Shown here: positions 971 through 33,600 of the stretch, piece after piece | Layout of the letters: the number at the start of each line of letters is the position of its first letter | Numbering within the stretch: position 1 is the first letter of the stretch | NCBI RefSeq assembly: GCF_001194135.2 | Contig: NC_068982.1 | Location: 37,534,963-37,571,419, forward strand | DNA from: Octopus bimaculoides | Lineage: Eukaryota | DNA: 36,457 nt | Direction: 5' to 3' | Program-made: the position numbers and the translations under genes | Notes under the pieces: generated by a model | Databases searched by the model: none | Told to the model about the DNA's origin: nothing | Seen by the model: the letters and a program-made list of their open reading frames with translations, nothing else

Positions 971-3900
971 TACATACATACACAAATACTTATGTTTTTT
1001 ATTCTATATTAATGTTTCATTTCTAAAATCAATTCTGGTAAGTGAACTTGTGTTAAAAAGTTTTTTTGGTTCAATGTTTAGAAGTAGTACACACACCCAG
1101 TATCTGTAGCCACTCAACTTTCTTGGGTACCAGATGAAGCTTCAGTGTCTCTTTGAAAGCAGTACGTTGAATGAAGACGCATCATTTTTAGAAATTACAT
1201 AAAATTTTGTGTTATTGGTATGTTTTAATCATATATTTTTCTTTGTTAACCAGAGAAATGAAATCAAAGAGGATAAAATTAAAATTACAGTTTTTTAAAT
1301 ATATCATATTCAATCAAAATTATCAATACATTTAATAATCCACTAGATCATTTGGTTATTTTTAAGTTTCTATAAATTTCCTATAGAATCCAGAGCCAAA
1401 AAAATTTGTAAAAATAAACTTTAAAATGAGAACATTGCATTGCTAATGTAAAAGTAAGGCACAATATTGACTTATAAACCTTTAATATATTTGGTAGTAT
1501 ATTATGGTTGAAGAATGAAATACTGTGTCCTTGCTGCAATTAATATTTTGGTTATTGGAAGAAACATCTCCTTAACCTGGGATGTTCCTTTGAAGCCAAT
1601 GCTTAGCTCTGGTTTTATTGCATGAAACAAATGAAAAGTCTACTGTTGGATGATATGCCTCTCTTCTGAAAACAAAATTTCCAGATAAAATATCTCAGGC
1701 GGATAGCTAGGTTAATAAAAAATGGAATAAAGTGTTCTGTGCCAAAATATGATTTGTTAAATGCAGATTTGAATTTATGGAACCTGAGGTGGGACATTAC
1801 TTTATAGAAACCATGCCAAATCAGACATAGGAGTTCAATGTGACCCTGTGGCTTGCCTGTTATCCTATCAAACCATCCAATCTATGCTAGCTTGGTAAAT
1901 GGGTGTTGAATGATGATGAAACATAATTTAAAACAGGCATGGCTTTATGGATTTGGTTTTACAACCACATCATGTATTCTATTATAGCCTTGTTGACCAA
2001 TGCTTTGTGAGTGTTCAAAAGCCTGTCATATTTATATACGTGTGTGTATCTGTTACCATTTTCATCTGTTGACACTGCTTGGAAGATGGCACTCTAACCC
2101 TAACCCTATAATCTAGCATATATCAATTCATTAGTACCAGACTTAAAAATAAGTCCTGGTTCAACATGTTCAATTAATACTTTTGAAGGTGGTAATCCAG
2201 TATGTTAATGACTTCAAGTCGAGTAAACTGTATGAAAAAATATAGTTGTGATTTCTGAGTCATAAACATTTTGACAATGTATGTAAAAATTAAGATGTTT
2301 TTTTGTCTCAAATTATGTGTAGTTTGATGTGGCATTACCAAGTTATTCTGATGATAAATAAACCAAGATGAAATAAAAGTAGTTAAAATGACATTTTCAA
2401 ACCGATAAACATAAAATTACAGGATGAATAAATGGTTTGCATAAGGGATGATGATAACTGGTTGAGAGGAGTGAAGGAAATGAATGTAGAAGGGAGCAGA
2501 GGAAGGGGGAAACTGAAAGACTTGGCTAAAGATAATAGAGGAGGATGTGAAGGCAATGGGAGTTTGTCAAGTGGTGTATAGGATGAGTCAAAATGTTAAA
2601 AAAACATTATGGGGCTCACAAAGCTAACCATTGTTCAAGAAAGAAAAAAAGATTTTTAAGGTTTATTGTTGAATAAAGAATTAACGTGAAATGACTTGAT
2701 AACAAGGGGAAACGACTCTGGTAAAAGTTGTGTAAAATGTTTACACATAAATAATAATGAAATTATTGTGTTCAGTGCTCAGGTGCAAAATGTCGGGAAA
2801 GTGAACAGTGTATGAGTCATGATATATACATGTGTGCATGCGTATGGAGGTGAGGATATCAGGTGTAGTGTTGGCGAATTTTAGGAAGCCTGGAGGTTTT
2901 AAAGGATGCAATACCTCAGCAGCTAACAATTGATGCAGGTAATTTGTTCCATGCTTCAGCAACAGAGTGTGAAAGAATGTTTCCAAAAGTCATGGGAGCT
3001 GTGCTGTTTTCTGACTTTGTAGGCTTGCCCGTGTGTGTCAGACACTTGGAATTCAAAAAGGTGCTCAAGATTGTTGTTGGCATAATGGTTAATAATTTTG
3101 TGGGTGTTTACCAAGTTAGTTGCCAGATGTTGCAGCTTCAATGTATCCATGCCAGGGAAGCAAGGGGTTTGGAGTATGGTAGATGCCTGATGGAGGGTAT
3201 TCGCTTGGTTGCATGTCTCTGAACAGTTTCCAGGAGGTCAATGTTCTCAGCAAAATAGGGGTTCCAGACAGGTGATGCAAATTCCAAGTGTGGCCACACC
3301 ATAGTCATATACAGCGTTAAATAAATAGCTGGAGAGTGGCTGACAAAGGTTTTGTTGAGTGATGCCTAGACACCCTCTGCCTTCTTGACAGTTTTAGAGA
3401 TGTGCTTTGTCCAGTGCAAATTGTTGCTGACAGTGATGTCCAGGTTATGTTTACAAGAAGACTTCTTGGTAGTAGCGTTGTGGAGGGAGTATGTGGACGC
3501 TGGGAGTTTCCTCCCAAAATGCATGGTGGTACATTTGTCCACAGCCATGATCCATTGCTGCATTGTCTAGGTCCAATTGCAGGAAAGATCTATAGTGTTC
3601 AGGATCTATCCTTTTGATCTCGAGGTACAGCTTGATGTCATCTGCATATTTCAGCACTGTGGCATTTGTCATTGATGTATGTAACAAACAAAAGGGGACC
3701 AAGAACAGATCCCTGCTGTACACCAGATGACATCTCATAGTGAAGAATACTGTCCTACAACTGTGACTACTTCTTTTCAATTGAGAATGGACTTCAACCA
3801 AACTCAAGATAACTAAAAACAAAATGAACAAAACCTGTTTTTCATCTTTCAAATCAGAGTCAGATTAAAGCCAATTAATGGTTACACACACATACATAAG

Positions 3901-6900
3901 GATAATGTCAAAGAGAAACATTTGTTCCTCTTTAAATCATATCTTTGAAACTGTTAAATGATAAACGACCATCATTCTCAAACAAACAGTGGTTATTTGT
4001 TTTTTCATTTGGGTGGTTGGAGTTAGGAAGGGCATCCAGCTGTAGAAACTCTGCCAAATTAGATTGGAGCCTGGTGTTTCCATCCGGTTTCACCAGTCCT
4101 CAGTCAAATCGTCCAACCCATGCTAGCATGGAAAGCGGACGTTAAACGATGATGATGATCTTCATTGTACAAGATCCAGTAGCTATAGTAAAGTCAGCAA
4201 CATCAAATATATAGCCTTGCAATTTGTTTCATTGTCATTAGCTAATTCAGCAAACATTTTACATTAATTTAAAAATTACAAAAATAGATTGTTTTATGTA
4301 AGGGAGAAAAAGGAAATATTTGATAAGAGATAAGACAGCAGTAGAAGCATCTGTTATAATTTTACTTTTATAATGTCTACATTTATCTAAATTTTTGTTG
4401 TCTCTGATAAGTCACAAAGGAGATCATCAATCAACATTTCAGTGTTGTCTACAATGACTGCTTTATAGTAACAAGCTTACTCTGATAAAGCAGAATCATC
4501 TTGTCTTTTGTATGTCTAGGACTAAATGTCTGTTTTTTGCCTTCAAGACATGTTATATAGCAGGGAGACTTGGCTGTTTTCTAGCAAGTTGAGCAACTAT
4601 GTAGATTCTGTCCTAGGTAAATGAAATCATAGTTCTGTTTGTTTTTTTTATATTTTATATCATCCTGGCCTTGAAATGTAACAAAGGGTTCTTACATAAA
4701 ATTATGATGAAAGGTTTATTTTAAATGTGCACATTTTAAAATAGACAGTCTTGTATCATAGAATCAAAAGTGTCTCAAACAGATTGGTTGTGTAAGGGTT
4801 AAAATGGTAATTTTCTTTTCCTTATTCTTTTTTCAGGAGCAAGTGTTTGACTATATTTTTAACCATTTGGGTATTGATACTGAAAGTTGTGTGGATCATC
4901 CCATTGTCATGTCTGAAGCTCTGTGTAATCCAAACTATTGCAGACAACGTAAGAAATATTTGATATATCAATTTATTTTTAATAGCTGTGGTTAGGAAGC
5001 TTGCTTCCTAGCCATATGGTTTTGGGTTCAGTCCCACTGCTTGGCACCATGGGCAAGTGTCTTCTGCTATAGCCTCGGGCCAACTGAAGCCTTGTAATTG
5101 AACACTTACAAAACTTATTCTAATGAATCCAAAAGAGTTGCAGTTCGTTCATTATAAACCTTCAGGCAAAACAAAACAGTGGCACATAAAAAGCACTATC
5201 TGAACGTGATCGATGCCAGGCCCACCTGACTAGCACGTAAAAAGCACCCACTACACTCTCAGAGTGGTTGGCATTAGGAAGAGCATCCAGCTGTAGAAAC
5301 ATTGCCAGATCAGATTGGAACCTGGTGCAGCTGCTGGCTCTACGGACGTTAAACGATGATGATGATTGAAGCATTGCATCAGTTGTGCTGGGTCTGAATT
5401 TCTTTCTGCATTTTTAGCTAGCTAAACTATCATAAAGAGTGTTTGTATTGGAGAAGCAAACTGTTGATTTCTTGTTTATAACAAATTTGTAAAGATATTT
5501 TTTTGTTTTCATTCCAGAAATGTCTGAGTTGTTGTTTGAATGTTACCATGTTCCTAAAGTTGCTTATGGCAATGATGCATTATTCAGTTTGTACAAAAAT
5601 CATCCAAAACCAGGTATTCTCATAATTCATTTAAAATCGTTTCAAACATGTCATTAACTTTTATTGTTACAATTTTTCTTCATCAGGTAAATTGGAAAAA
5701 AGATAGATGTGTTCGTTTGTATCCATCTCTCACATGAAAACAATAGGGAATTTGGAAAATTGCTTTTAAAATAGATGTATCCTGCATTGAATAACTTCGG
5801 GTGGATTTTATTTATGAATTTTAGTTCTATTTTTGCTGAGCTGTTAGCCTCAACTACAGATACTTATCCCTAGTGATGGGAAAAATGAATGATGCACATG
5901 TTGACAAACAAGAAAAAGTAAAATATTAGTTACAAAAGTTTGCAAATTGTTGATAATGTTTCTCATGTCAACTCCTGTTATTTTCCTTCTATTACTCCAG
6001 ACATTGAACAGCATTATAACAGCTTTTACCGTCTACATGTTAAATGAAATTACTGTTTTAGATAACATAATTCCTTCCTGTCATAAGTTACTTTACTCAT
6101 CTTCTCTCTACATTATGCAAGCCCAATTTTACATTTTTCCTTTGACACAGACAAGACTGTTTTTTAAGTTAATCAATCCCTAGATATGTTTTATATTATT
6201 GTATCAGTCCATACCAGCCAATTTCTACAGTCGCTTATTAAAAATTTCATCCAAATGTCCTTTGGCACATTTTACTCACTTAAAGGAAGGACACAATCTG
6301 ATCTGAGACAAATATAGAATGGTCAGAACTGTTAAATTTGATAATGTCTGTCAATCTGGCATTTAACAACAATCTTTGTATTAATAATTTTCCATACAGA
6401 TGTTAAATTTTTACATTTACTCTATACATTAGCAAGTTTTCTTATTCTTTTATTAACAGAATCAGCAAATGCTTTAATAGTTGACTGTGGTTATCAAACA
6501 ACTCATGTCATTCCCTTTATAAATGGTCAAATTGTTGCTGAGAATTGTCGCCGTCTAAATTTAGGTGGTTTACATCTTGATTCATTCCTACACAGACTTC
6601 TTCAGTTAAAATATCCCAATCATTTGGCTGCAATAACTCTTAGCCGTGCTGAAGTAAGTATAATTCTTGAAAATTTTATCAAAATCTATATTTTTTTTTT
6701 TCTTTTTCCTACCAGCTCTTATTGCCCTCTATATTAATCAACTGAAAGATTTTGGGCTTATTGGCCAGAAAGCTGGGATTAAGAACTATATTGATATACT
6801 AGCATTGTATCACATGTCTAAGATGTATCAGTAATGAAACATAATAAAGACAGACTCACAGCAAGTGTAAAGAAATGAGCTAATGGATCTTCAATTAAAT

Positions 6901-9900
6901 CATTAGCAGACTTGCAAGAGAACAAATAAAAAAAAATCTTGGTATTGATCAAATTTGACAAAGTACACTGTATGCTTCCCAGATTCACCACACAGTTATT
7001 GAGGGAAATCATTTCTTTCATTACTTACACATCTTTAAGCATTACATTCAAAAGCTTCCTTTTATTTTTGTCAAACTCTTTGATCTTCCTTTCTTTACAA
7101 ATATCTAGTGTGTCCTATTTCCAAGTAGTGTAACATCACTGAGCATACAGGGGTTTTGCCCTGAATTGCAACATCTCAAGTGGAGATGGATGTAGTCATC
7201 TTTTTAATCTCCTCAAGTATCTCTGTTTTTGATCCAGTCTCCATAGTCAGATTTGAGATTTCTATAGTTCACATCTTTAAGAATTCTGGCAAAGTGTAGT
7301 CATTGCCTGGTATTACTAATGTTGTCACCTACACGCTTCCTTCAGTACATTGAGTGGCTAGTTGTTAATTCTAATTTAACAATTTAATTCAAATAGTATC
7401 AATTACACTTCATGCTAGTATTCTAAAATCCAGGCATGAACTTCTTGCAATAGCAAGATATTTTCCATACAAATCGAGAGAAGTCTAGCACCAAGCTCTA
7501 CATATGTATGAATAAAATAACTAAAACCCTCAGAAGCTACCACAAAGACAAGGACATAAAATCTGACTTCACATCCAAAGCATTACTAAAACTCCATGTG
7601 AAAACTAGTTTTCCTTTTCAGAGCAATTGCTAACTTACAACAAAGCTCAAGACTACTGCTGCATATTCAAATATCTTGTGCTGTATTAAAAACAAACTGA
7701 CAAGTTCCAACATAATGACTTCTGATCCAGAGATAGCCATTGTCTCCTCTCTGAACTATCAAGTTGCATACTCTCTTGATTCAGCTCACTTATCTTCTGT
7801 TTGTTGTCATTCCCCCCAGATTTTCACACAAATCATTACTTCCAGAACTGCAGCTCTCTACAATAATTCGGCCATCTGCTTAGAGCCACCCATCAAAGGT
7901 CATGGTGGCTGCCATCTTGACAAGATACTGGGAGAACAATTGCTATAAGCTTGTTCCAGGTAAAATTTTAGATTAGGCTGGAGGTGTCATTGGCTCTCAT
8001 TCATTAAAAAGATGCTATGTTCATTAGCAAATACATTGTATTATTAAAAAATACTATATTGATAGTGTGAAAGATACTGTTCAATCATCTAACAGAACGA
8101 AGATTTAGCTCTAAATAATGTAGTAAATAACACACATATGCACTAAAAAAGAAAAGAAATGGCAAAGAATTTTAAAAACAATATTTAATTAACTATGTTA
8201 ATACAGATACTGTACATTTTTGTTTTCTTTTAATAAGACAAATATGTCTGGGTTGAAATCTACTTAAAATGGAAATATACTACAAAGACAATGAAATTAA
8301 TCAACACTTTAGTATAAAAAATTAAGTCACGGAAAACCCATTACAGACGTTAAAGAAATATGAATTGGATTTGTAAATTTTCCAATGAGACTGAATTATA
8401 GGCAGAGTTTTTTTCCATCTCTATATGCCTTTACTTACGAGTACCTGACAAATTGCTGCTCTTACTGGCTGATGAATAAGCAACAGGCATACCCTGGCTG
8501 TTGTAGGTGTACATTGGAGCACTGGGGTTGTTCTTCACTTGCATGCATGTCATTGGGTTTCCAACCATAGGCATGTTAGAAGCATTTGCTGCTGACATCA
8601 TATAGACATCTGAATACTTTAGGTCTTTGTCTAAGTATTTGTGTTGCTGTGAGTAGGGCAATTGGCTATAGTTTGCTCCTGACATATTCATTGCTTGCAT
8701 CTGTTGTACTGCAGCAGCTCCATACATCTGATACTGGGGCAATGGTGCAGAACTCATCTGCATGAGGTTTGGATAGGTAGAATTCTGAAGTCCAACAGAC
8801 ATCATACCTACAATAAGAAATAAATAAATTTTTATACATTTGTCTGTATGAATAAAAAAAAAGTGGAGGGTGGTTTGTAAATATCTACATAGTATTCTAC
8901 CTAATATTTTCTAAATACAAGAAAATTTTTGCCTAAATAGAGGATATCCAGAAGAAAATTAGATCCAAATATTTTCTCAAATTATAATTGAAAGTGTAAC
9001 AAGAAAATAACTAAAGTATTTATTAAAACTAACAATCATTCATGAAATATAATTAATGTCTATAGTGTACATAAACTGTATACGCATGATGAATTAAAAA
9101 AAAATTTTTTTTTAAATTCCGGATTCACATCCAATAGGTGTGGTACAAATTTAACCCACATATTCAGATGATTTACAACTTTAATCTGTTGTCTCCAATA
9201 TATAAATTTCTTCTGATGTAAGTTGTAAATACACCTGAAATATAAACACTAACACAACCCAAGGGGCGATATCTCTGGAAATTTTGTGAAGTATATACAC
9301 ATTTTGTGCCCTTCTGATTGATTTTTCTTTTGCAAATATAGTCTACTTTATTTCTTATGTATGATTGTTAATTCAGTGAATATCATTTTTGTGAACCATG
9401 TGCATTTGTATAAGTTTATATTTTTGTATAAGTTGTGTATTAGTTTTATATTTTGCAATTTTATGCTTTTCTATGAAAAAGTATAAAAATGCAGAAAACA
9501 AGCAAAACGTTAAAAAAAAAAAAAAAGAAAGATACTTATCTGTTATGTGTGTGCGATATCTCATCTGTGTGGAAAGTGATAAAGCACAATATACACTGCA
9601 AAACAACATCCATGATAAACAATGAAAGAAAACATTGCTACTTGGAGAAGCTCACCTCTTTTTGAGAGGTTTTACGATCATTTCTTTATAAGTTTACTTC
9701 TTTAATCTCACTTTTGGATGTTTTTTTTTTAATGTAAAAAGTATCTTTATTTCATATAAAGTCCTAGGGCAACTTTTAGAGTAAAATTTTTGAAATGCTT
9801 TTATTCAAAGCTATTAAAAAAATTGTGTAATTCATTAAAATCATTCAAGCATCTGAATTAGTTACATATTTCTTATTTTACTATGGTTCCTGNNNNNNNN

Positions 9901-12900
9901 NNNNNNNNNNNNNNNNNNNNNNNNNNNNNNNNNNNNNNNNNNNNNNNNNNNNNNNNNNNNNNNNNNNNNNNNNNNNNNNNNNNNNNNNNNNNNNNNNNNN
10001 NNNNNNNNNNNNNNNNNNNNNNNNNNNNNNNNNNNNNNNNNNNNNNNNNNNNNNNNNNNNNNNNNNNNNNNNNNNNNNNNNNNNNNNNNNNNNNNNNNNN
10101 NNNNNNNNNNNNNNNNNNNNNAAAAAAAAAAAAAAAAAATGAATGTAACAGGTAGTGAAGAAGGAATTTTATCAAATATATTTGAGATTTTAATGATGTA
10201 AAAAAATATAATTGGAGGATTTACTCATATTTTTCAGAAATAATTTCTGACAAACATCAATATATTTATAGACTTACTTGAAATAAAGTTAAATAAATTT
10301 AAAATTAAAAATATTTATCACAAGATAAACTGGCTAATTTTTTTAATGTAATCTAAATGCATTCTAATGTTGAAAACAAATGTTTTCATATAATTAATAT
10401 TAAAAAAAAAAAAATGTAGAATATTCTTAATCAAATATTTAATAGCTTAATTTTTTTTTCTTCAATAAATCTCTGAAAATTGGTCCAAAAAAAAAAACAA
10501 AAAAACATTATAAACCATTAAAAGCTATTGGATTTGGTCAAAATGTTTTCACAATGGCTACACTAAGAAAGTATTTGAAAGTTTAGAAACTTAAACATAC
10601 CTGGTGTCTGATTAACAAACATGCTTTGCTGACCATAAGGGTAACCAGTATTTACACTGATACCTTGTTGAGAACCGCTACCATACATGATTCCTGGAAG
10701 AGTGACTGCTACCCCCTGTGCTGGCTGCAACACCATTCCAGAACCTACTGACCAGTCTTGTGATTTAGTGACATATTGTTTTGTTGCATCATATGCTTTT
10801 GATGTATCATAACCTTTTGACATTTTTACTGATCAGTTTCCAAACTTGCTGATTTTAAGTTTACTTTCTGATAACCAAACCCTTTCAGAACTTGAAATTT
10901 CAAAGAGACAAAGAAAAAGAAAAAAGAAAATTATAAGCAGTGACAAGTTTTTGTTGCTGTAAATGTACAATGTCTTTATTATACAATTGATACTTTGTAT
11001 ATTTCTATATTAACCTCTTAAAACAATTTGTTATAATAAATTAAAAATTTCAGTCTTGAGCTGATTTTTTTTTTAATGATTTCTACTTGTGCAGTGGAGT
11101 GTAATTAACCAAATTTTTCCTTGCTACAGGAGTTAGTACAACACCACACACATATGGCAGTAAACTACCATGAAGAGCTAGCAAAATGGGCTGACTATGA
11201 GTATTATGAAGCTAATGTTCATAAAATCCAATTGCCATTCACTCTGGTAAGTTATCTTACCTTTAAATTTATATAATTAATGTTACTATGATTTGAATGG
11301 TCATATGAAGTAATTGATTCTTAAAGTTCTTTATGAAGTATGATTTCATAAATTATTTAAGACCTGGTATAAAGATAAAAAATTAAAACTGATGAAATTA
11401 AAACTTATTCATGCCAATTAAATGTTAAGCAAATTCGATGAAGTTAACTTGATTTTTTTTTTTATTGGGATTACTGCTCTCCAATTTTTAATCATTACCA
11501 CTTGTATAAGATTTTTCATGAACATTTATTACCAAGCAACATCATCTATTTATTTATTAGTCCTAAAAGTCATTTTATATTATGCGTAATACAAATAGCT
11601 AGAATGGCAGAATTCTAGTTTAAACACCTCATACAACCCTTCATAACCTTATTGGGGGGAGGGGGTCAGAAAATTTCTGCGAATTTGTATTCTACAGATG
11701 GGAATTCATACGATTATGCAAAAAATTTTTTTTTTGCAGTATGATTTAAGGGCAATTTAGCTGTTATTTTTAGCACATATTACGACCACCTGATACTGCC
11801 CTCGTGTCTTTGTCACTCTGACACGTATAGATGTTTTTCAATATTTTTCTCCACATGAACACATTTAATGGAATGCTGATGCACCTAAAGGTGGTATATT
11901 GCCGGAATTTAAGCAAAAAAATTCGGACTATTCATATTTTTTAAAAGATTCAAAACGTGGAACTTTTAAGATTTAAAGGGAAAGAGTTTGTAAAATTAAA
12001 AAAAAAAAAATTTTCTTTCCATAATCGTATGAATGAAATTCTTGTGTGCAGAACACAAATTCACAAAGACTTACTGAAAATTCCAAAAAATAAAAATGAG
12101 GAGTTATTATGGGGTGCTTAAACCAAAATTTCGCCGCTAAAATAATTTCAATATGACAAATAAGTAAAAAGAAAACCAACAACTTAGCAGTGAGAAATGC
12201 AAAAGTCCAGTCTACTAATGAAAAGCCAATGCATTGAAGGGAGTTCATAAACTTTAAACATGATTTATACATTAATATAGAGATAGTGATACAGATTAGA
12301 CTCAAGAGAAAATCATCTCGGAAGAAGCGAAATTGTGTATAAGAATTAGCAGAAAGGACGGCTCGGTTTGCAAAAGTGTTAGTGATATTAATAACAAAAA
12401 TGTTTCGAGTATCAGTTAAAGAAACTGAATGATCTAAAGATGTTAGGGGAAAAAATCTAAAGCAGTTTATATTTGCTATGAACCTTGCAGAGTTATAAAT
12501 TGCGAAGTGTAGTGACAACATGCAATGTTTTTATGGCAGAGATAAACATTTATAAAACTTACATAGATCGTATTTATCTACAAAACAAATACGTTTTACT
12601 TTTTCTCTTTTTTTTTTTTGGTACAAACTGTAAATAATTCTGTTATTTTGTTAATTACTGAGAATTGGACGCTGTGTTATGAGATGCATGCTGAAAATAA
12701 TGATGGAGCGGAGAGACAATTTTGTAGAATTAATATCAACTATAACGTGATAAGTGGATACTCTGGTTACTCATATTTTTTAAAATTTGGACAGAGCAAA
12801 AATCAGAGGAAATTGATCTAAAATCCACTCATTTGAAATATGAATCGAAAATAAATATAAGGATGTAGTATATATGCAATTGATTTTGGATCTTACAAAT

Positions 12901-15900
12901 GATTACAAGTTAATTTGATAGTGATAAGCAGAAATGCAGAGCTAAAGGAAAACAAGCTCACATGTGGTGTAAACGGCATCATAATTCCACTTCAAGGGAG
13001 CTGGTATTTTTTAGGCTTATTTATGATGGGCTGAGGTTAAAGAAATAAACCGTCATGTTTGTCATAAAACGAGAAAACGAAAAGGTAAATTTTTACCATT
13101 ACACCAGTCACACTTTGAAGGTGTGGTTTACATAAATAATGAGTGATTTCCGACTGTTTTGATGATCAGAATCGCTCAAAATACATCAAAAGCATACATT
13201 TACCCAAAATGAGACGGGTATAAATTTCACTCTCAAAACTAGACGAGTACAATTGTAAATCCATGCCGTTTAAATATATTCTATTGTGTTTATATCTACG
13301 TGAGACACAGGTTCAGATGCTAGTCTGATAGGGGTAACTTTCCGGTAAATTTTTATTACACTCCGTCTCATTTTGAGGGGTGGTTTACCTAAAAGAACGA
13401 GTAATTTCCGACGGTTCTGATGAACAGAAAGATGGGAAAATTACGGGTCTAATTATAAAAAAATTATCAATGAAAATGAAGTTTTATAAAGTCAAATCCA
13501 TGAAGAAAAAGCATTTTGTCAAGACCTTCATTGAAAATTAATTTATGTACTATTTAGCTCTTTCAATCCAACTTCCATCATTAAATACATTCCACAACCC
13601 TCTTCATTATAGCGAGTTCTGATTCAATTATCTTTTTAATTTCACTCTTAAAAAACTGTATTCATTTCATAGCTGAAATAATTTACCAATTTATTTTTTT
13701 AAATAAAAATATTAACCACTGAAAGGATCTCGATTGAGTGTTATATAAAACTGTAAAGTTACATTTCGTCTTTTTAAAATCCCTCACATTTTTGCTTTGT
13801 TCCAAAATTGACGTTTGAAGAATTTTTGCTAATTAAACAGATTTAACTCAAAATTTTTGCTAATTAAACAAATTTAACTCAAAAATTTTTGCTAATTAAA
13901 CAGATTTAACTCAAAATTTTTTACTTGTATAACTCAAGTAATTTTGTTCTGTACTTGTGTTTAAAAAATCCAAGATATTGCATCAATTCTTTACTTCAAA
14001 CTGCTTTTCTTTTTAACTCTCAAAAGAAATGTTTTTTTTATCGTCATTCTAATATTTAATTTTGAAATAGTTGAGCATTAGTTGACAGAAGCATCTCTCC
14101 ATTCTTTGCGGATTGAGTGGGATGGACGATATGGGTCTCGTTAAATGAGTCCACTTCAAGAATTTACAATAAATGGTTAAAAAAAAATAAACAAAGGTCT
14201 AAAACATTTCAGCTATATATTGAAATTAATTTAGGTATTTGGAAGTTTTAAAGAGAGAGGCTGTTAAAATCTTATAATAATAGATAAAAATAATGCACGT
14301 CAACCAAGCCAGCCATTCTGTGAGTTCACTGAATGGGAAGAATGTCGAGGGAATATCGAAATTATTTCGAAAACAAAAAAATTTACTAGGTATACGTTAA
14401 TATTACCTCACATGGTGATGGAGCTTTAAGAAATTAGAGCTAATATTAGATTTTTAGTCCACAATTCTATGGATATTACCTTTTTAAATCGATTTAAAAT
14501 AAAAATAATGGCCATTAGAATTTGGAAAAAGCCATTGTAGGATTGCAGCAGCAACGATGTATATTTCAGGAAAAGGACGTCAGTAAAAGATTTTATACTG
14601 TGCTATTCATGATATTTTATTTCCAAAATGTCAAGGAAATCACTTTAAAACCAAGAAAATGAAATTAAAACCCTTTTCTAATATTTAAAACGCCCGTGAC
14701 TAATCCCTTCGTTGAAAGGCGTCAGAACCAAATTACCAGAACATGGAAAGAAAAGACCTGACAGAGAAACCCCCAATTCCGTGAACAGAATAAGAAGAAA
14801 CCTTACTTTATATAAATATATATTTTCCACTTAATTGTGAGTAGCAGCAGTCTTGATACGGATGATGGAAGTTTTGTGATGGCACACAAGCTTGTTGAAG
14901 AAATGTCAATTATTTGCTTCTAAAGGCTAGCAAGTCAATGAATGATTCACATACATACGCGCAGCAATGGCTTCTTCCTTCACTGCTGCTAAGATCAACA
15001 TTATCGAACTTCTTTTTTAAAATTGTGTATGTGTGTAGGTGTGTGTGCGTGCGCTTGCGCGCGCGTGCCTGCCTACGTGCCTGCGTGCGTGCATATACTG
15101 ATGTATGTATGTATGTATGTAATTTTTACACAGTGACTCAAGGGGTCGAGAGTTTCGTGAATTAGGCACGCACGCACACATAAACATTTATTGTAAATTT
15201 GTTTTGCAAGAATTGTGGTTCGATCTGGAACCGTGTGTTGTTGAAACTAATATAATTATATTTCGGAAATAGTCGATAAAACTGATTAACAACAACTAGT
15301 TAGTGTTTATTACGATGACTCTTCTGAAATTAAAACATAAACAATTCAGTTATCCTTTTATTCGTTTCAGCCATGTGGCTGCGGTCATGCTGGAGCTCTA
15401 ATATATATATATATATATAATNNNNNNNNNNTCTAAACACGCATAGACCTTTTTATATATTATTTATTTGATTTTTTTTGGCCTAAATAAATTTGAATTG
15501 TTTCCTCGTGAAAGGACTTTATACGATTCAAATTAAATTTGCACTTTGGTACTAGAATATTATTAACTCTCTAGATTTTATTCTATTATTAGTCATAGTA
15601 AACTAGATTCTCATTTAAATTTCACTTTAGAATCAGCACTAAAGTCTGATAAATGTAAACACACGCATATGTAAGCCATTGGATTAAATGCTTTGTATAT
15701 TAAATCCTCATTTATTTCGTTTATAAAGATAGATTCAGTCGTTTATCTTCATGTTCAATGCCCTATTTTTTTTCTCTACATTGCATTATCCTGATCAGAG
15801 TCGTTCCATAATGACCATCACGTTTTTTTATATTTCATATATCAGGAGATTTATTACCCAGTGCGCGAAAGATTAATAATAAACAAAGTAGTCCATATGT

Positions 15901-30600: not shown

Positions 30601-33600
30601 CTTACTACATTTTTGAACTTATACATCTTATTTATTGAAATTACTGCAGAGTTCCAGAGCTATTATTCCAGCCTTCTATGATTGGAATTGAACAGGCTGG
30701 TCTTTCAGAAATGGTTGATTATGTATTGAAAAAATGTTCTCCATCTGAACAGAATGCCTTGGTTCAGGTAAGTCCTTGTAAAATTACTACTACATTACAG
30801 ATATTTTGTAATCTGTAGCATATTGTACACATTGATTCATGATTATCAGTATGGTGGCAACAAGAAAATGTAGTAATGGCTTGTACAGGCAAGGGAATTT
30901 AGTATGCAACAAGGTTCTGTTCTTAGCCACTTTTTTATTCATTATCTTTCTGCAGGCTGTCACAAAAGAGTATGGACTTGGTTACTTATGGAAACGCCTT
31001 TATGCAAATGAAAAGATTTTTATAGTAAAAATTCTATCAAAGAACTACAGAATAAGTCTGAAACAACCAAATGAAAGTTTACTGATGTATATGTAAGAAG
31101 TAGGCAAAAATTTAATGTTACCAATACAGTAAGATGATTGCTGTTGGATTGTCATTTTTGTACAGCAAAGGATATGCTAGCTGCAACCAAGAAATCTTGC
31201 AACATGAGACATGATCTAAAGATCTTGAACCCCTTAGACAGTTTGCTAGAAGTAGTATATAAGATTCTAAGTGACCATCATTAATGATTAACATGATTAA
31301 TATATTTGGTAATAGCAAAATGGCTAAGTTAGATAAGATAAAAAGTTTCATGACTTGATAGAAGGCTTCTGACTTTGAATGAAGGATAAATTGCATATGT
31401 AGTATACACTGAAACCTGAAGAAGAATAAGATGATTATGAGCTGATAAATGTGCATGAGTAGAGTGAGTGCAAGCAGTTTGGGAATATGTTTAACAATTT
31501 CAGCAGGGATATATAGTGTTAATAGAGAATGTATTGACGAAAAGGGTCTTGTTGTAAGCATAGGTGTAAGAATACTTGATAGAAAATTATTACATTTGAC
31601 ATAACTGAACCTCAGAGTAAATCATGCAAGGTTGTAGAAGGCTGGTTTTGTAAAGCCTTCAAGCCTACACTGGGAGACCCACCCATGCACCCCATCTCAA
31701 TCATGATATTACTAACAGAAGCCTAAACATGGAACTCAGTGCAACTAATTGTATGAACAATCAAGAACTGTAACTGTAGATAACTTGATGGATAACCAAC
31801 TAGCTCATAGTCCTTGAATTAAAATCCACTACAGATATTTTGTGTGTATCTGTATAATACACTCAATTATGTGTGCCTCAGTTCAACTAGTTGCCAGGAA
31901 TAGGTACCAGGTCATCTGGGAATGTTACCTGGGATAGGAAATCATCAACCATTTGTCTTAAATAGCTCCTTACATCTAAGGAGACAATGTTAATCATCAT
32001 CATCATCATCATCATCAGCATGGGTTGGACGGTTTGACTGAGGACTGGTAAGCCAGAGGCTGCACCAGGCTCAATCTGATCTGGCAAAGTTTCTACAGCT
32101 GGATGCCCTCCCTGATGCCAACCACTCTGAGAGTGTAGTGGGTGCTTTTTACATGCCATCGGCACGAGGTCCAGTCAAGTGGTTCTGGCAACGACCACAC
32201 TCGGGCTCAAAAGGTGTTTTTACGTGCCACCTGCACAGTAGCCAGTCCAGCGGCACTGGCAATGACCATGCTCGAATGTTGTTTTACACGTGCCACCGGC
32301 ACATGTGCCGGTAAGGCAGCGCTGGCTATGATCATACTCAAATGGTGCTTTTCACGTGTCACCAGCACAGGAGCCATTCCATGGCCCTGGCAACGGTCAC
32401 GCTCGGATGTGCTTTTAACATTCCACTGGCACAAGTGCCAGTCAGGTGGTATTGTCATCGGCCACGTCAGTGATTTTGGTTTATATTGGTGTTTTATTTC
32501 TTATTAAGGAACTTTGTGATGAAATGGAGATGAACTACATATTTTCACTTAACATAGTTTCTGGTTTCAAACACTTATCAGAATTGTTTTTTTGTTTTTT
32601 TTTAACCTTCAAATTTTATTTTTAATTATTTCCCCTGGGTACCTAAAATGCAATTTGTGGGAAATACATGACTTGATAGGACAGAAATCATGTAATTTTA
32701 TGTTTATCAGAAAGGAAATAAAGGTAATAATACATATTTAATAAAAGCTATTTTATTTTCAGTGTGTCTTCCTGACAGGATCAAATGCCATGTTTAATAA
32801 TTTCAATAAAAGAATGGAACGAGATCTTCTTGCCATACGTCCATTTCAGACCACATTCTCTGTCTATCGTGCAGGTAAAAAACTTTAAATTCTCCAGATA
32901 TTATTTCAGTGTTTAATATTTTGAAACCTTAATTTATTTGTGGACAATTTAGACAATCAATATTATGCATGCACACGCACACACTCACATGCATGCATGC
33001 ACACATACACAGCATTTGCACTAAGTTCCCAAGATGGTAGGAAATATTTGTGAAGACTATCAGCTACGTATACCTCAAAATATCAAGCCGTTTTCTTACG
33101 GGGCAGAATATTGAATAGAACTGTATATAGTGTCATTTTTGAAAATTTTATTGTGAAATCCTTTGAGATTAAATATTCACCTTGTACTAGATGTTAGCAT
33201 ATAGGTTTAATGATATGGTTGCATATTTACTGCCATAGGCAGCTTATAGTGAGAACTGGTATTCTTGTTCCATTCACTAACTGTATGAACCTGTTGTATT
33301 TATTTACAGTTAGGTGAACTGAAATACAAACTGTTGAGCCTCCAGAGGGTTGTGCAACACAGGGATCATAGTCATCTGTGACTCTCTTGGATAGAAATCA
33401 CAAACTATAGACAAATACCTTTTATCATAAAGTTCAGTGTTTAGTTAAATGTTTCTTCAAATGTAAGCACAATGAGAGAGTGCACATTGTTGGATTTATT
33501 TTACTGGTGATTGTAAATATTTTATTTAAATGCATTAAAAAAGAAGAAATTTTTGAGCAGTGCATTTGATATGTTGCTAAAAGTAGTACTGCTTTTAGCA

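What the first reader, a model, noticed from the sequence alone, without database searches (positions are those of the whole stretch)
8439..10823. Orphan antisense gene nested in ACTR5 intron 4 encoding an Arg/Glu-free, Met/Gln/Tyr-rich prion-like protein
Seen: two minus-strand ORFs the track lists separately join exactly in frame (CCA G|gtatgt ... ttgtag|GT ATG ATG). They give ~197 aa with about 20 Met, 21 Gln and 17 Tyr, plus much Ser/Gly/Pro/Asn and no Arg or Glu. The ATG has an A-rich context and an in-frame stop just upstream, and the second exon ends in a perfect GTAAGT donor. Knowledge: Q/N/Y/G/S/M-rich, charge-poor sequences are typical of prion-like, phase-separating domains (FET proteins, the SS18 QPGY domain, germ-plasm scaffolds). 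It is not a reflectin, since it lacks Arg/Asp richness and the MDMS motif. I recognise no folded domain or family. Inference: a lineage-restricted condensate-forming or germline/neural protein hidden antisense in an INO80 subunit gene.
Basis: partly seen in the sequence, partly recalled or inferred. Interest (0 to 1): 0.78.

Follow-up and report, generated by a model that had tools for sequence, protein, structure and literature searches.

The report
Coleoid-only disordered Met/Tyr/Gln-rich protein gene
The two minus-strand reading frames are the coding exons of a real, expressed 199-residue protein gene found only in octopuses, argonauts, cuttlefish and squid, already listed in RefSeq as "uncharacterized", lying antisense among the exons of the ARP5 (ACTR5) gene; what it does is untested.

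Summary
The in-frame join is real. RNA contigs splice exactly 10601|8807, and the 199-aa product is identical to RefSeq XP_014776310.1 (Octopus bimaculoides) and XP_029651071.1 (O. sinensis), both named "uncharacterized protein". So the gene is annotated, not hidden.

Four details need correcting:
- The GTAAGT is not a donor. It is the codons CGT-AAG-TAA (…GTRK*), transcripts read through it, and Argonauta and the Sepia-like genome have CGC there. The protein therefore has one Arg.
- There is a third exon, an untranslated 5' exon at about 14807-15024.
- The coding exons lie in ARP5 intron 6, not intron 4. The 5' exon lies in intron 7, so ARP5 exon 7 sits inside this gene's first intron.
- The N gap is intronic and does not affect the frame.

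Orthologues exist in Argonauta (84% identity) and in cuttlefish and squid (about 50%), with the same arrangement. dN/dS is about 0.12. Profile searches of 1.8 and 5.8 billion proteins found nothing outside cephalopods. Pfam and PDB gave no significant match, and AlphaFold gave pLDDT 37 with no secondary structure.

Tyr, Gln, Lys and Met positions are conserved, while Ser, Thr, Val and Leu are not. It fails the Q/N-rich prion-domain criterion and is not a reflectin. A sticker-and-spacer low-complexity protein is the best reading, but condensate formation and any tissue role remain untested.

The parts
14807..15024 (-). Exon 1, untranslated 5' exon of the gene. The 5' end is uncertain. The donor is AAA|GTAAGG.
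   Evidence: RNA contigs L003 and L004 align to 15024..14809 at 93% identity. The sequence and donor were read. The first 96 nt of L003 and 28 nt of L004 map nowhere in the locus.
10891..14806 (-). Intron 1 of the gene. It contains ARP5 exon 7 on the other strand.
   Evidence: The same arrangement is seen in the Sepia-like genome contig L005.
10601..10890 (-). Exon 2. The 5'UTR is 10890..10824, with an in-frame TGA at 10835..10833. The ATG is at 10823..10821. The CDS 10823..10601 encodes residues 1-74 plus the first base of Gly75. The acceptor is caag|TTCTG, and the exon start is good to about 3 nt.
8808..10600 (-). Intron 2, phase 1, GTATGT...TTGTAG. It contains the assembly gap 9893-10121.
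   Evidence: The O. sinensis intron is gap-free, 1795 nt, and full of stops. The intron position is conserved in Argonauta and in L005.
8252..8807 (-). Exon 3. The CDS is 8807..8434 and the stop TAA is 8433..8431. The 3'UTR reaches at least 8252; its true end is unknown.
   Evidence: Transcripts run uninterrupted from 8809 to 8252 (L003) and to 8283 (L004). ATTAAA signals lie at 8234 and 8189.
8433..8438 (-). It is part of the codons CGT-AAG-TAA and is not spliced.
   Evidence: Transcripts read through it. Argonauta and L005 have CGC-AAG-TAA, so the GT is absent while R-K-stop is kept. All orthologues end G(T/P)RK.
6459..6653 (+). ARP5 (ACTR5) coding exon 6, host gene ([16 protein letters not shown]...LSRAE).
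   Evidence: Human ARP5 (6hts_H) matches at E=1.4e-67. RefSeq-derived gene calls give a 715-aa Actin-family gene spanning the locus on the opposite strand.
11130..11246 (+). ARP5 coding exon 7 ([39 protein letters not shown]). It lies inside intron 1 of the antisense gene.

Best explanation
This is a three-exon minus-strand gene: an untranslated 5' exon followed by two coding exons. It encodes a 199-residue, signal-peptide-less, intrinsically disordered, moderately low-complexity protein. The composition is Ser 14%, Gln 11%, Met 10%, Gly 9% and Tyr 9%, with no Glu and one Arg. The gene is single-copy and under purifying selection. It was detected only in coleoid cephalopods, and it has been interleaved antisense with ARP5 introns 6 and 7 since before octopuses and cuttlefish or squid diverged. 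All of that is shown.

The mechanism is inferred. The protein most likely acts through many weak contacts made by its positionally conserved Tyr, Met and Gln residues ('stickers'). These are separated by freely varying Ser, Thr, Ala, Val and Leu ('spacers'). That would mean self-association or co-assembly of the kind seen in aromatic- or Met-rich low-complexity domains. Met oxidation is one possible way to tune it, as described for the Met-rich domain of yeast Pbp1.
For: Gene reality:
- The spliced RNA contigs L003 and L004 have the exact junction and read through to the TAA.
- The protein is identical to XP_014776310.1 and XP_029651071.1.
- Among three Octopus sequences there are 0 nonsynonymous against 5-9 synonymous differences. 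Octopus versus Argonauta gives dN/dS of about 0.12. Against the Sepia-like sequence, dN is 0.355 with dS saturated.
- Decapod transcripts have the same three-exon structure, with a TATAAAAG about 30 nt before the 5' end of their first exon.

Restriction:
- One single-sequence search and two profile searches found only three cephalopod clusters.
- One cluster is present in Sepia esculenta RNA-seq run SRR20545817 (PMC10466719).
- The homologous ARP5 intron in the annelid Ridgeia and in a second non-cephalopod contig has no such ORF.

Disorder:
- No Pfam family reached threshold and there was no PDB match.
- AlphaFold2 gave mean pLDDT 37 and no secondary structure.
- The highest 19-residue hydropathy is 1.0, so no transmembrane segment is expected.

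Sticker and spacer pattern:
- Invariant positions are Tyr 76%, Gln 71%, Lys 70% and Met 60%, against Ser 26%, Val 15%, Leu 11% and Thr 0%.
- Pooled, Y+M+Q is 40/58 against S+T+A+V+L at 16/75 (Fisher p=5.6e-8).
- The counts of Met (20-21), Tyr (17-18) and Gln (19-21) are almost constant across lineages.

Met-rich low-complexity domains that phase-separate and respond to oxidation are reviewed in PMC8394241.
Against: - No experiment or predictor of phase separation was run.
- Q+N content is modest: 17% overall and at most 21 per 80 residues.
- Sequence entropy is 3.78 bits, which is only mildly low complexity.
- 46% of positions are invariant between octopus and cuttlefish or squid, in long blocks such as QQxKYLDKD, VGNxxxCM and GMxVAY. 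That fits specific partner-binding motifs as well as, or better than, generic condensation.
- The AlphaFold alignment had only 4 sequences, so low confidence is weak proof of disorder.
- Tissue and subcellular location are unknown.
Confidence: 0.55

Rival explanations
1. The protein is a disordered adaptor or ligand that works through a few specific short linear motifs, and may fold on binding a defined partner. On this view it is not a condensate scaffold, and the biased composition is secondary.
For: There are long, position-specific conserved blocks across lineages whose synonymous sites are saturated: the N-terminal KGY(D/E)-K(A/G)YD-KQY repeats, P(L/M)PQYQ, QQxKYLDKD, VGNxxxCM, MYxYxSxGMxVAY and the C-terminal G(T/P)RK. 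dN/dS is about 0.1. The single Cys and the single conserved Arg are invariant.
Against: No known motif is strictly conserved: the LPxY at residues 97-100 is MPQY in Argonauta. AlphaFold predicts no helix or strand. Conserved residues are overwhelmingly the sticker types rather than a few local patches.
Confidence: 0.3
2. It is an extremely diverged member of an older metazoan family. Its similarity has been erased by the biased composition, so it is not a coleoid invention.
For: HMMER loses power on compositionally biased sequences. Only 4 sequences fed the profile. Nautilus and other molluscs could not be examined at the genome level with these tools. The host intron position is ancient, being shared with an annelid.
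Against: There was no hit at E<=1e-3 outside cephalopods among 1.84 billion representatives or 5.8 billion clusters. The one Pfam hit (DUF6198, E=0.034, 14 bits against a cutoff of 27) appears for only one of four orthologues. The equivalent intron is 0.7-2 kb and empty in two non-cephalopods.
Confidence: 0.12
3. It is an antisense non-coding transcript that regulates ARP5, and the open frame is incidental.
For: The transcript is antisense and interleaved with the host exons. ORFs of this length are not very rare by chance at 33% GC.
Against: The frame, the start, the phase-1 intron and the R-K-stop ending are all kept across coleoids. dN/dS is about 0.12, and there are 0 of 5-9 nonsynonymous changes within Octopus.
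Confidence: 0.02
4. It is a fragment of a larger protein whose other exons lie elsewhere.
For: A GTAAGT lies at the end of the frame. Some gene calls in the cuttlefish and squid cluster carry N-terminal extensions, such as P0003 and P0012.
Against: Full transcripts show an in-frame TGA before the ATG and read through the GTAAGT into the 3'UTR. The GT is absent in Argonauta and in L005. The extensions begin at a TTG or in unspliced or alternative 5' ends picked by a prokaryote-style gene caller. RefSeq models in two Octopus species give 199 aa, as does the GenBank model in Argonauta.
Confidence: 0.02

Closest known systems
Methionine-rich low-complexity domain of yeast Pbp1 (ataxin-2 orthologue), and the Met-bearing low-complexity domain of TDP-43
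   Same: High Met content (10%) in a disordered, charge-poor, Gln/Ser/Tyr-containing sequence. The Met positions are conserved at 60%. Such domains self-associate, and Met oxidation dissolves the assemblies (review PMC8394241).
   Different: There is no sequence homology. Here the whole protein is the low-complexity region, with no Lsm or RRM module attached. Assembly and redox sensitivity are untested.
FET-family (FUS, EWS, TAF15) SYGQ low-complexity domains
   Same: Tyr residues are spread through a Ser/Gly/Gln-rich, nearly acid-free sequence, and the Tyr positions are the best conserved.
   Different: S+Y+G+Q is only 41% of the residues (one search counts), which to my knowledge is well below the level in FET domains. 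It has 10% Met and 5% Lys, and no RRM, RGG or zinc finger. It is a stand-alone 199-aa protein.
Reflectins (cephalopod Met/Tyr-rich disordered proteins)
   Same: Cephalopod-restricted, disordered, and rich in Met and Tyr.
   Different: There is no MD dipeptide at all and no [M/F]D(X5)MD motif. Arg and Asp are scarce. There is no Pfam hit.
Classical nested genes in host introns (for example OMG, EVI2A and EVI2B antisense in an NF1 intron; from general knowledge)
   Same: A small gene on the opposite strand lies inside a larger housekeeping gene. The arrangement is conserved over long evolutionary time.
   Different: It is not contained in one intron. Its own first intron encloses a host exon, so the two genes are interleaved.

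Membership tests
Reflectin | Repeated reflectin motifs built on conserved MD dipeptides, [M/F]D(X5)MD(X5)MD | tested here: not met
   There are 0 'MD' dipeptides and 0 regex matches. No Pfam family reached threshold.
Reflectin | Composition rich in Arg and Asp as well as Met and Tyr | tested here: not met
   1 Arg and 6 Asp in 199 residues.
Q/N-rich prion-like domain (yeast type; criterion of at least 30 Q+N in 80 residues, recalled from Michelitsch and Weissman 2000) | At least 30 Gln+Asn in some 80-residue window | tested here: not met
   The maximum is 21 Q+N per 80 residues, and 34 of 199 overall.
Q/N-rich prion-like domain | PLAAC or PAPA score above threshold; self-templating aggregation | not testable with these tools
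   No such predictor or assay was available, and no parameter table could be used reliably.
FET proteins (FUS, EWS, TAF15) | SYGQ-rich N-terminal domain joined to an RRM, RGG repeats and a RanBP2 zinc finger | tested here: not met
   No RRM or zinc-finger domain is found. The complete ORF is 199 aa with stops on both sides.
SS18 / SS18L (QPGY domain) | N-terminal SNH (SSXT) domain followed by a Gln/Pro/Gly/Tyr-rich tail | tested here: not met
   There is no SSXT hit at E<=10, and no homologue outside cephalopods.
Taxonomically restricted (clade-specific) gene | No detectable homologue outside the clade, and orthologues under selection within it | tested here: met
   Only cephalopod clusters were found in three searches. 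dN/dS is about 0.12. Caveat: Nautilus and other mollusc genomes were not searched at the DNA level.
Nested intronic gene | The whole transcription unit lies inside a single intron of the host | tested here: not met
   The coding exons are in ARP5 intron 6 (6654-11129), but the 5'UTR exon at about 14807-15024 is in intron 7. The same is true in L005. It is an interleaved antisense gene.
Intrinsically disordered low-complexity protein of the sticker-and-spacer kind | No stable fold is predicted. Aromatic or Met stickers are conserved in number and position while spacers vary. | tested here: met
   pLDDT is 37 with no secondary structure. Y/M/Q are invariant at 40/58 positions against 16/75 for S/T/A/V/L, p=5.6e-8.
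Intrinsically disordered low-complexity protein of the sticker-and-spacer kind | Demonstrated phase separation or reversible polymerisation | not testable with these tools
   This needs purified protein or imaging.

The most novel reading that the evidence does not exclude
A protein invented in the coleoid ancestor, made almost entirely of conserved Tyr, Met and Gln stickers, forms oxidation-tunable assemblies. This would be a free-standing analogue of the Pbp1 Met-rich domain. Its interleaving with ARP5, kept since octopus and cuttlefish lineages split, would couple its expression to that INO80 subunit.
Probability: 0.1. Interest if true: 0.6.

Novelty: new member of a known kind. Interest (0 to 1): 0.35.

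Why it matters
Coleoid cephalopods have many clade-specific genes, and few have been studied beyond reflectins and the structural proteins of beaks and suckers. This one is unusually clean: it is single-copy, has orthologues in octopus, argonaut and cuttlefish or squid, is under clear purifying selection, and is entirely disordered. Its genomic position has been fixed since before those lineages split. That makes it a tractable case for two questions. The first is how a new disordered protein arises and is retained. The second is whether Met/Tyr-rich sequences act as redox-tunable assemblies outside yeast and mammals.

For annotation, the practical results are modest. The RefSeq model is correct, a 5' exon extends the gene into the next ARP5 intron, and the apparent terminal donor is a coincidence of codons.

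Tried and rejected
- My first join used coordinates one base off, which gave a frameshift full of stops. It was corrected.
- Pfam scan of four orthologues: only DUF6198 at E=0.034 and 14 bits, for one sequence. I rejected it as a compositional match.
- PDB profile search: only a PHA granule protein at E=0.56, rejected.
- A fold search was not run, because the model (pLDDT 37) would give meaningless matches.
- A protein search with ARP5 exons was meant to retrieve the octopus ARP5 and other mollusc loci. It returned only fragments: a coral ARP5, an annelid and unnamed contigs. I therefore built the exon map by comparing window ORFs with the Sepia-like contig and with O. sinensis.
- A 9-residue similarity (PYSSQHAFL) on the antisense strand of the homologous intron in L021 looked suggestive. 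It sits in an unrelated ORF, so I rejected it as chance.
- Literature searches for the LOC and XP identifiers, for peptide strings and for the octopus SRA runs found nothing.
- The unmatched 5' ends of L003 and L004 could not be placed in any locus.
- Other long ORFs nearby (11973..12521 minus, 31118..31561 minus) have no Pfam hit and were not pursued.
- I did not type sequences of prion-like comparison proteins from memory, so no numerical composition comparison with them was made.


Full report
**1. The observation**

On the minus strand the window has an 86-aa ORF (10563..10823) and a 124-aa ORF (8431..8805). Reading the sequence, the first ORF runs ...ACA CCA G|GTATGT, and the second is preceded by TTGTAG|GT ATG ATG. 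Joining 10823..10601 to 8807..8431 gives a 600-nt frame with no internal stop. The product is 199 aa ending ...SGTRK*. My first attempt was one base off.

There is one Arg, in the last three residues. The ATG has an A at -3, and an in-frame TGA lies at 10835..10833.

ORF length alone is not convincing at 33% GC. The stop probability is 0.074 per codon. By my arithmetic, about 0.4 open runs of at least 124 codons and about 7 of at least 86 codons are expected by chance in the window. The weight must therefore come from outside evidence.

**2. The assembly gap**

The run of N at 9893-10121 lies entirely inside the proposed intron (10600..8808). In O. sinensis the same intron has no gap. It is 1795 nt against 1793 nt here, is AT-rich, and has 39-47 stop codons in every frame. 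RNA contigs join the two exons directly. The gap has no bearing on the reading frame.

**3. Is it a gene?**

Yes.

- The 199-aa sequence is letter for letter XP_014776310.1 (O. bimaculoides LOC106873457) and XP_029651071.1 (O. sinensis LOC115224337), both named "uncharacterized protein".
- Two RNA-derived contigs from a third, closely related Octopus (Logan SRR16213285 and SRR16213286; L003 and L004) contain the uninterrupted 600-nt CDS.
- These contigs align to the window as three blocks: 15024..14809, 10893..10596 and 8809..8252.
- The junction is exactly ...CAGACACCAG|GTATGATGTC.
- The introns are GT...AG only on the minus strand, which fixes the direction of transcription.

The window itself is O. 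bimaculoides assembly GCA_001194135.2, chromosome CM046602.1.

**4. Three corrections to the anatomy**

(a) The GTAAGT at 8438..8433 is not a donor.
- Both transcripts read straight through it into at least 180 nt of 3'UTR.
- All orthologues end G(T/P)RK.
- Argonauta and the Sepia-like genome have CGC-AAG-TAA, which removes the GT while keeping Arg-Lys-stop.
- The hexamer is a coincidence of the codons CGT-AAG-TAA.

(b) There is an untranslated first exon at about 14807-15024, with donor AAA|GTAAGG. Exon 2 starts at about 10890, after caag|.

(c) The host intron is number 6, not 4.
- The host gene is ARP5. The exon translations match human actin-related protein 5 in the INO80 structure 6hts_H at E=1.4e-67, against about 1e-12 for actins.
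- The public gene calls give a 715-aa Actin-family gene on the opposite strand in O. sinensis, O. bimaculoides and Argonauta.
- In O. sinensis two coding exons lie upstream of what the window shows: MSADEEEEEENVF...LVIDNG and SYQCRAGWAS.... In the O. bimaculoides assembly that stretch is a run of N.
- The four ARP5 exons visible before the antisense gene are therefore exons 3 to 6.
- Exon 6 is 6459-6653, exon 7 is 11130-11246, and the intron between them is 6654-11129.
- The antisense gene's 5' exon lies beyond exon 7, so ARP5 exon 7 sits inside the antisense gene's intron 1. The genes are interleaved rather than simply nested.

**5. Relatives**

A single-sequence search, a profile search of the 5.8-billion-protein collection, and a full HMMER profile search of 1.84 billion cluster representatives all returned the same three clusters and nothing else:

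- Octopus.
- Argonauta hians: 199 aa, 84% identity.
- A third cluster of 205-206-aa proteins at about 50% identity.

One member of the third cluster (P0005) is encoded in eight SRA transcriptome assemblies. One of these, SRR20545817, is Sepia esculenta larval RNA-seq (PMC10466719). Another member (P0009) comes from Tara Oceans and JGI marine metatranscriptomes.

A 378-kb ENA contig (L005) carries the genomic copy. It has the same phase-1 intron at TPG|MMS and the same ARP5 exons 6 and 7 on the opposite strand. Its short 5'UTR exon again lies beyond ARP5 exon 7, with TATAAAAG about 30 nt upstream of the transcript start. Decapod transcripts carry a 3'UTR of at least 3 kb.

The gene and its interleaved arrangement therefore predate the split of octopods from cuttlefish and squid.

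**6. Selection**

- Among the three Octopus sequences there are 5-9 synonymous and 0 nonsynonymous differences.
- Octopus versus Argonauta gives dN 0.066 and dS 0.55-0.61, so dN/dS is 0.11-0.12.
- Against the Sepia-like sequence dN is 0.355 and dS is saturated.

This rules out an incidental ORF in a non-coding antisense RNA.

**7. Origin**

The exon 6 / exon 7 boundary of ARP5 is ancient. The annelid Ridgeia piscesae (L020) and an unnamed non-cephalopod contig (L021) have the intron at the same position. There it is only about 0.7 kb and about 2 kb long, and it holds no Met/Gln/Tyr-rich ORF. This weakly favours origin in the cephalopod lineage. Nautilus and other molluscs could not be examined with these tools.

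**8. What kind of protein**

- No Pfam family reached threshold. DUF6198 at E=0.034 appears for one orthologue only.
- There is no PDB relative.
- AlphaFold2 with the four-sequence alignment gave mean pLDDT 37, pTM 0.10 and no secondary structure.
- There is no hydrophobic segment (maximum 19-residue hydropathy 1.0), and the N-terminus, [12 protein letters not shown], is polar rather than signal-peptide-like.
- Entropy is 3.78 bits, which is only mildly low complexity.

Conservation is strongly residue-type dependent. Invariant positions are Tyr 76%, Gln 71%, Lys 70%, Met 60% and Gly 59%, against Ser 26%, Val 15%, Leu 11% and Thr 0%. Pooled, Y+M+Q is 40/58 against S+T+A+V+L at 16/75, p=5.6e-8. 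The numbers of Met, Tyr and Gln are nearly constant in all lineages.

This is the pattern expected of a sticker-and-spacer disordered protein. The long conserved blocks (QQxKYLDKD, VGNxxxCM, MYxYxSxGMxVAY) equally allow specific partner-binding motifs.

**9. Comparison with known kinds**

- It is not a reflectin: there is no MD dipeptide and few Arg or Asp.
- It fails the Q/N-rich prion-domain criterion that I recall from Michelitsch and Weissman, with a maximum of 21 Q+N per 80 residues against the 30 required.
- It lacks the RNA-binding modules of FET proteins and the SNH domain of SS18.
- The nearest functional analogy is the Met-rich low-complexity domain of yeast Pbp1, whose self-association is reversed by methionine oxidation (review PMC8394241). 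That is an analogy of composition only. There is no homology, and nothing here tests assembly.

**10. Verdict**

The gene is already annotated, so it is not hidden. It is a coleoid-wide family rather than an orphan, it ends at a stop rather than a donor, and it is interleaved with ARP5 introns 6 and 7.

"Prion-like, condensate-forming, germline or neural" remains a hypothesis. I put about 0.95 on the gene model and its restriction to cephalopods within current databases. I put about 0.3-0.4 on the sticker-driven self-assembly mechanism and about 0.3 on a motif-based adaptor. Interest is moderate: a clean, conserved, clade-specific disordered protein with an unusual Met content, but with no functional evidence yet.

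Noticed in passing
L005 2852-2900; L007, L012-L015, L017, L018 5' ends: The 48-nt 5'UTR exon of the cuttlefish and squid orthologue is 98-100% identical between the Sepia-like genome contig, Sepia esculenta transcripts and Tara plankton transcripts. The adjacent exon 2, mostly coding, is only 92-94% identical. A TATAAAAG lies about 30 nt upstream. This may be a conserved leader element.
   Followed up: partly
L015 and L017 against L005 10441-13371: Decapod transcripts of this gene carry a 3'UTR of at least 3 kb. The octopus 3' end is not defined: contigs stop at window 8252. A UTR of similar length would run antisense across ARP5 exon 6.
   Followed up: no
L008 2-1108 (minus): One transcriptome contig (ERR4031017) has a Ser/Thr-rich ORF ending in an AN1-type zinc-finger-like C-terminus (...[36 protein letters not shown]...), head to head with the gene and 55 nt away. 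It is probably an assembly chimera.
   Followed up: partly
L002 20824-22393 (reverse complement = the 1570 bases just before window position 1): The O. bimaculoides assembly has a run of N immediately upstream of the window. ARP5 coding exons 1 and 2 lie in the corresponding stretch in O. sinensis, so the start of ARP5 is not readable in this assembly.
   Followed up: yes
L003 1-96 and L004 1-28: The extreme 5' ends of the two octopus RNA contigs differ from each other and match nothing in the window, in O. sinensis or in Argonauta. They could be a further upstream exon outside the loci or assembly artefacts. L003 also ends in Illumina adapter sequence.
   Followed up: partly
window 2741-3852 (minus); 5162-5374 (minus) and 34354-34722 (plus); 32138-32507: These are ORF fragments that look like transposon remains. 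One resembles the tail of a LINE reverse transcriptase (...[14 protein letters not shown]...). A repeated element encoding ...FQSDLA(M/E)[20 protein letters not shown]... occurs in both orientations inside ARP5 introns.
   Followed up: no
window 11973-12521 (minus): A 182-aa ATG-initiated ORF lies inside ARP5 intron 7, which is also intron 1 of the antisense gene. It has no Pfam hit and was not conserved in the comparison with the Sepia-like contig. It is probably chance.
   Followed up: partly
L020 14071/14779; L021 10213/12198; window 6653/11130: The ARP5 exon boundary ...LSRAE|ELxxxH... is at the same position in octopus, a Sepia-like cephalopod, the annelid Ridgeia and an unnamed animal contig. 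The intron has grown from about 0.7-2 kb to 4.5 kb in octopus.
   Followed up: yes
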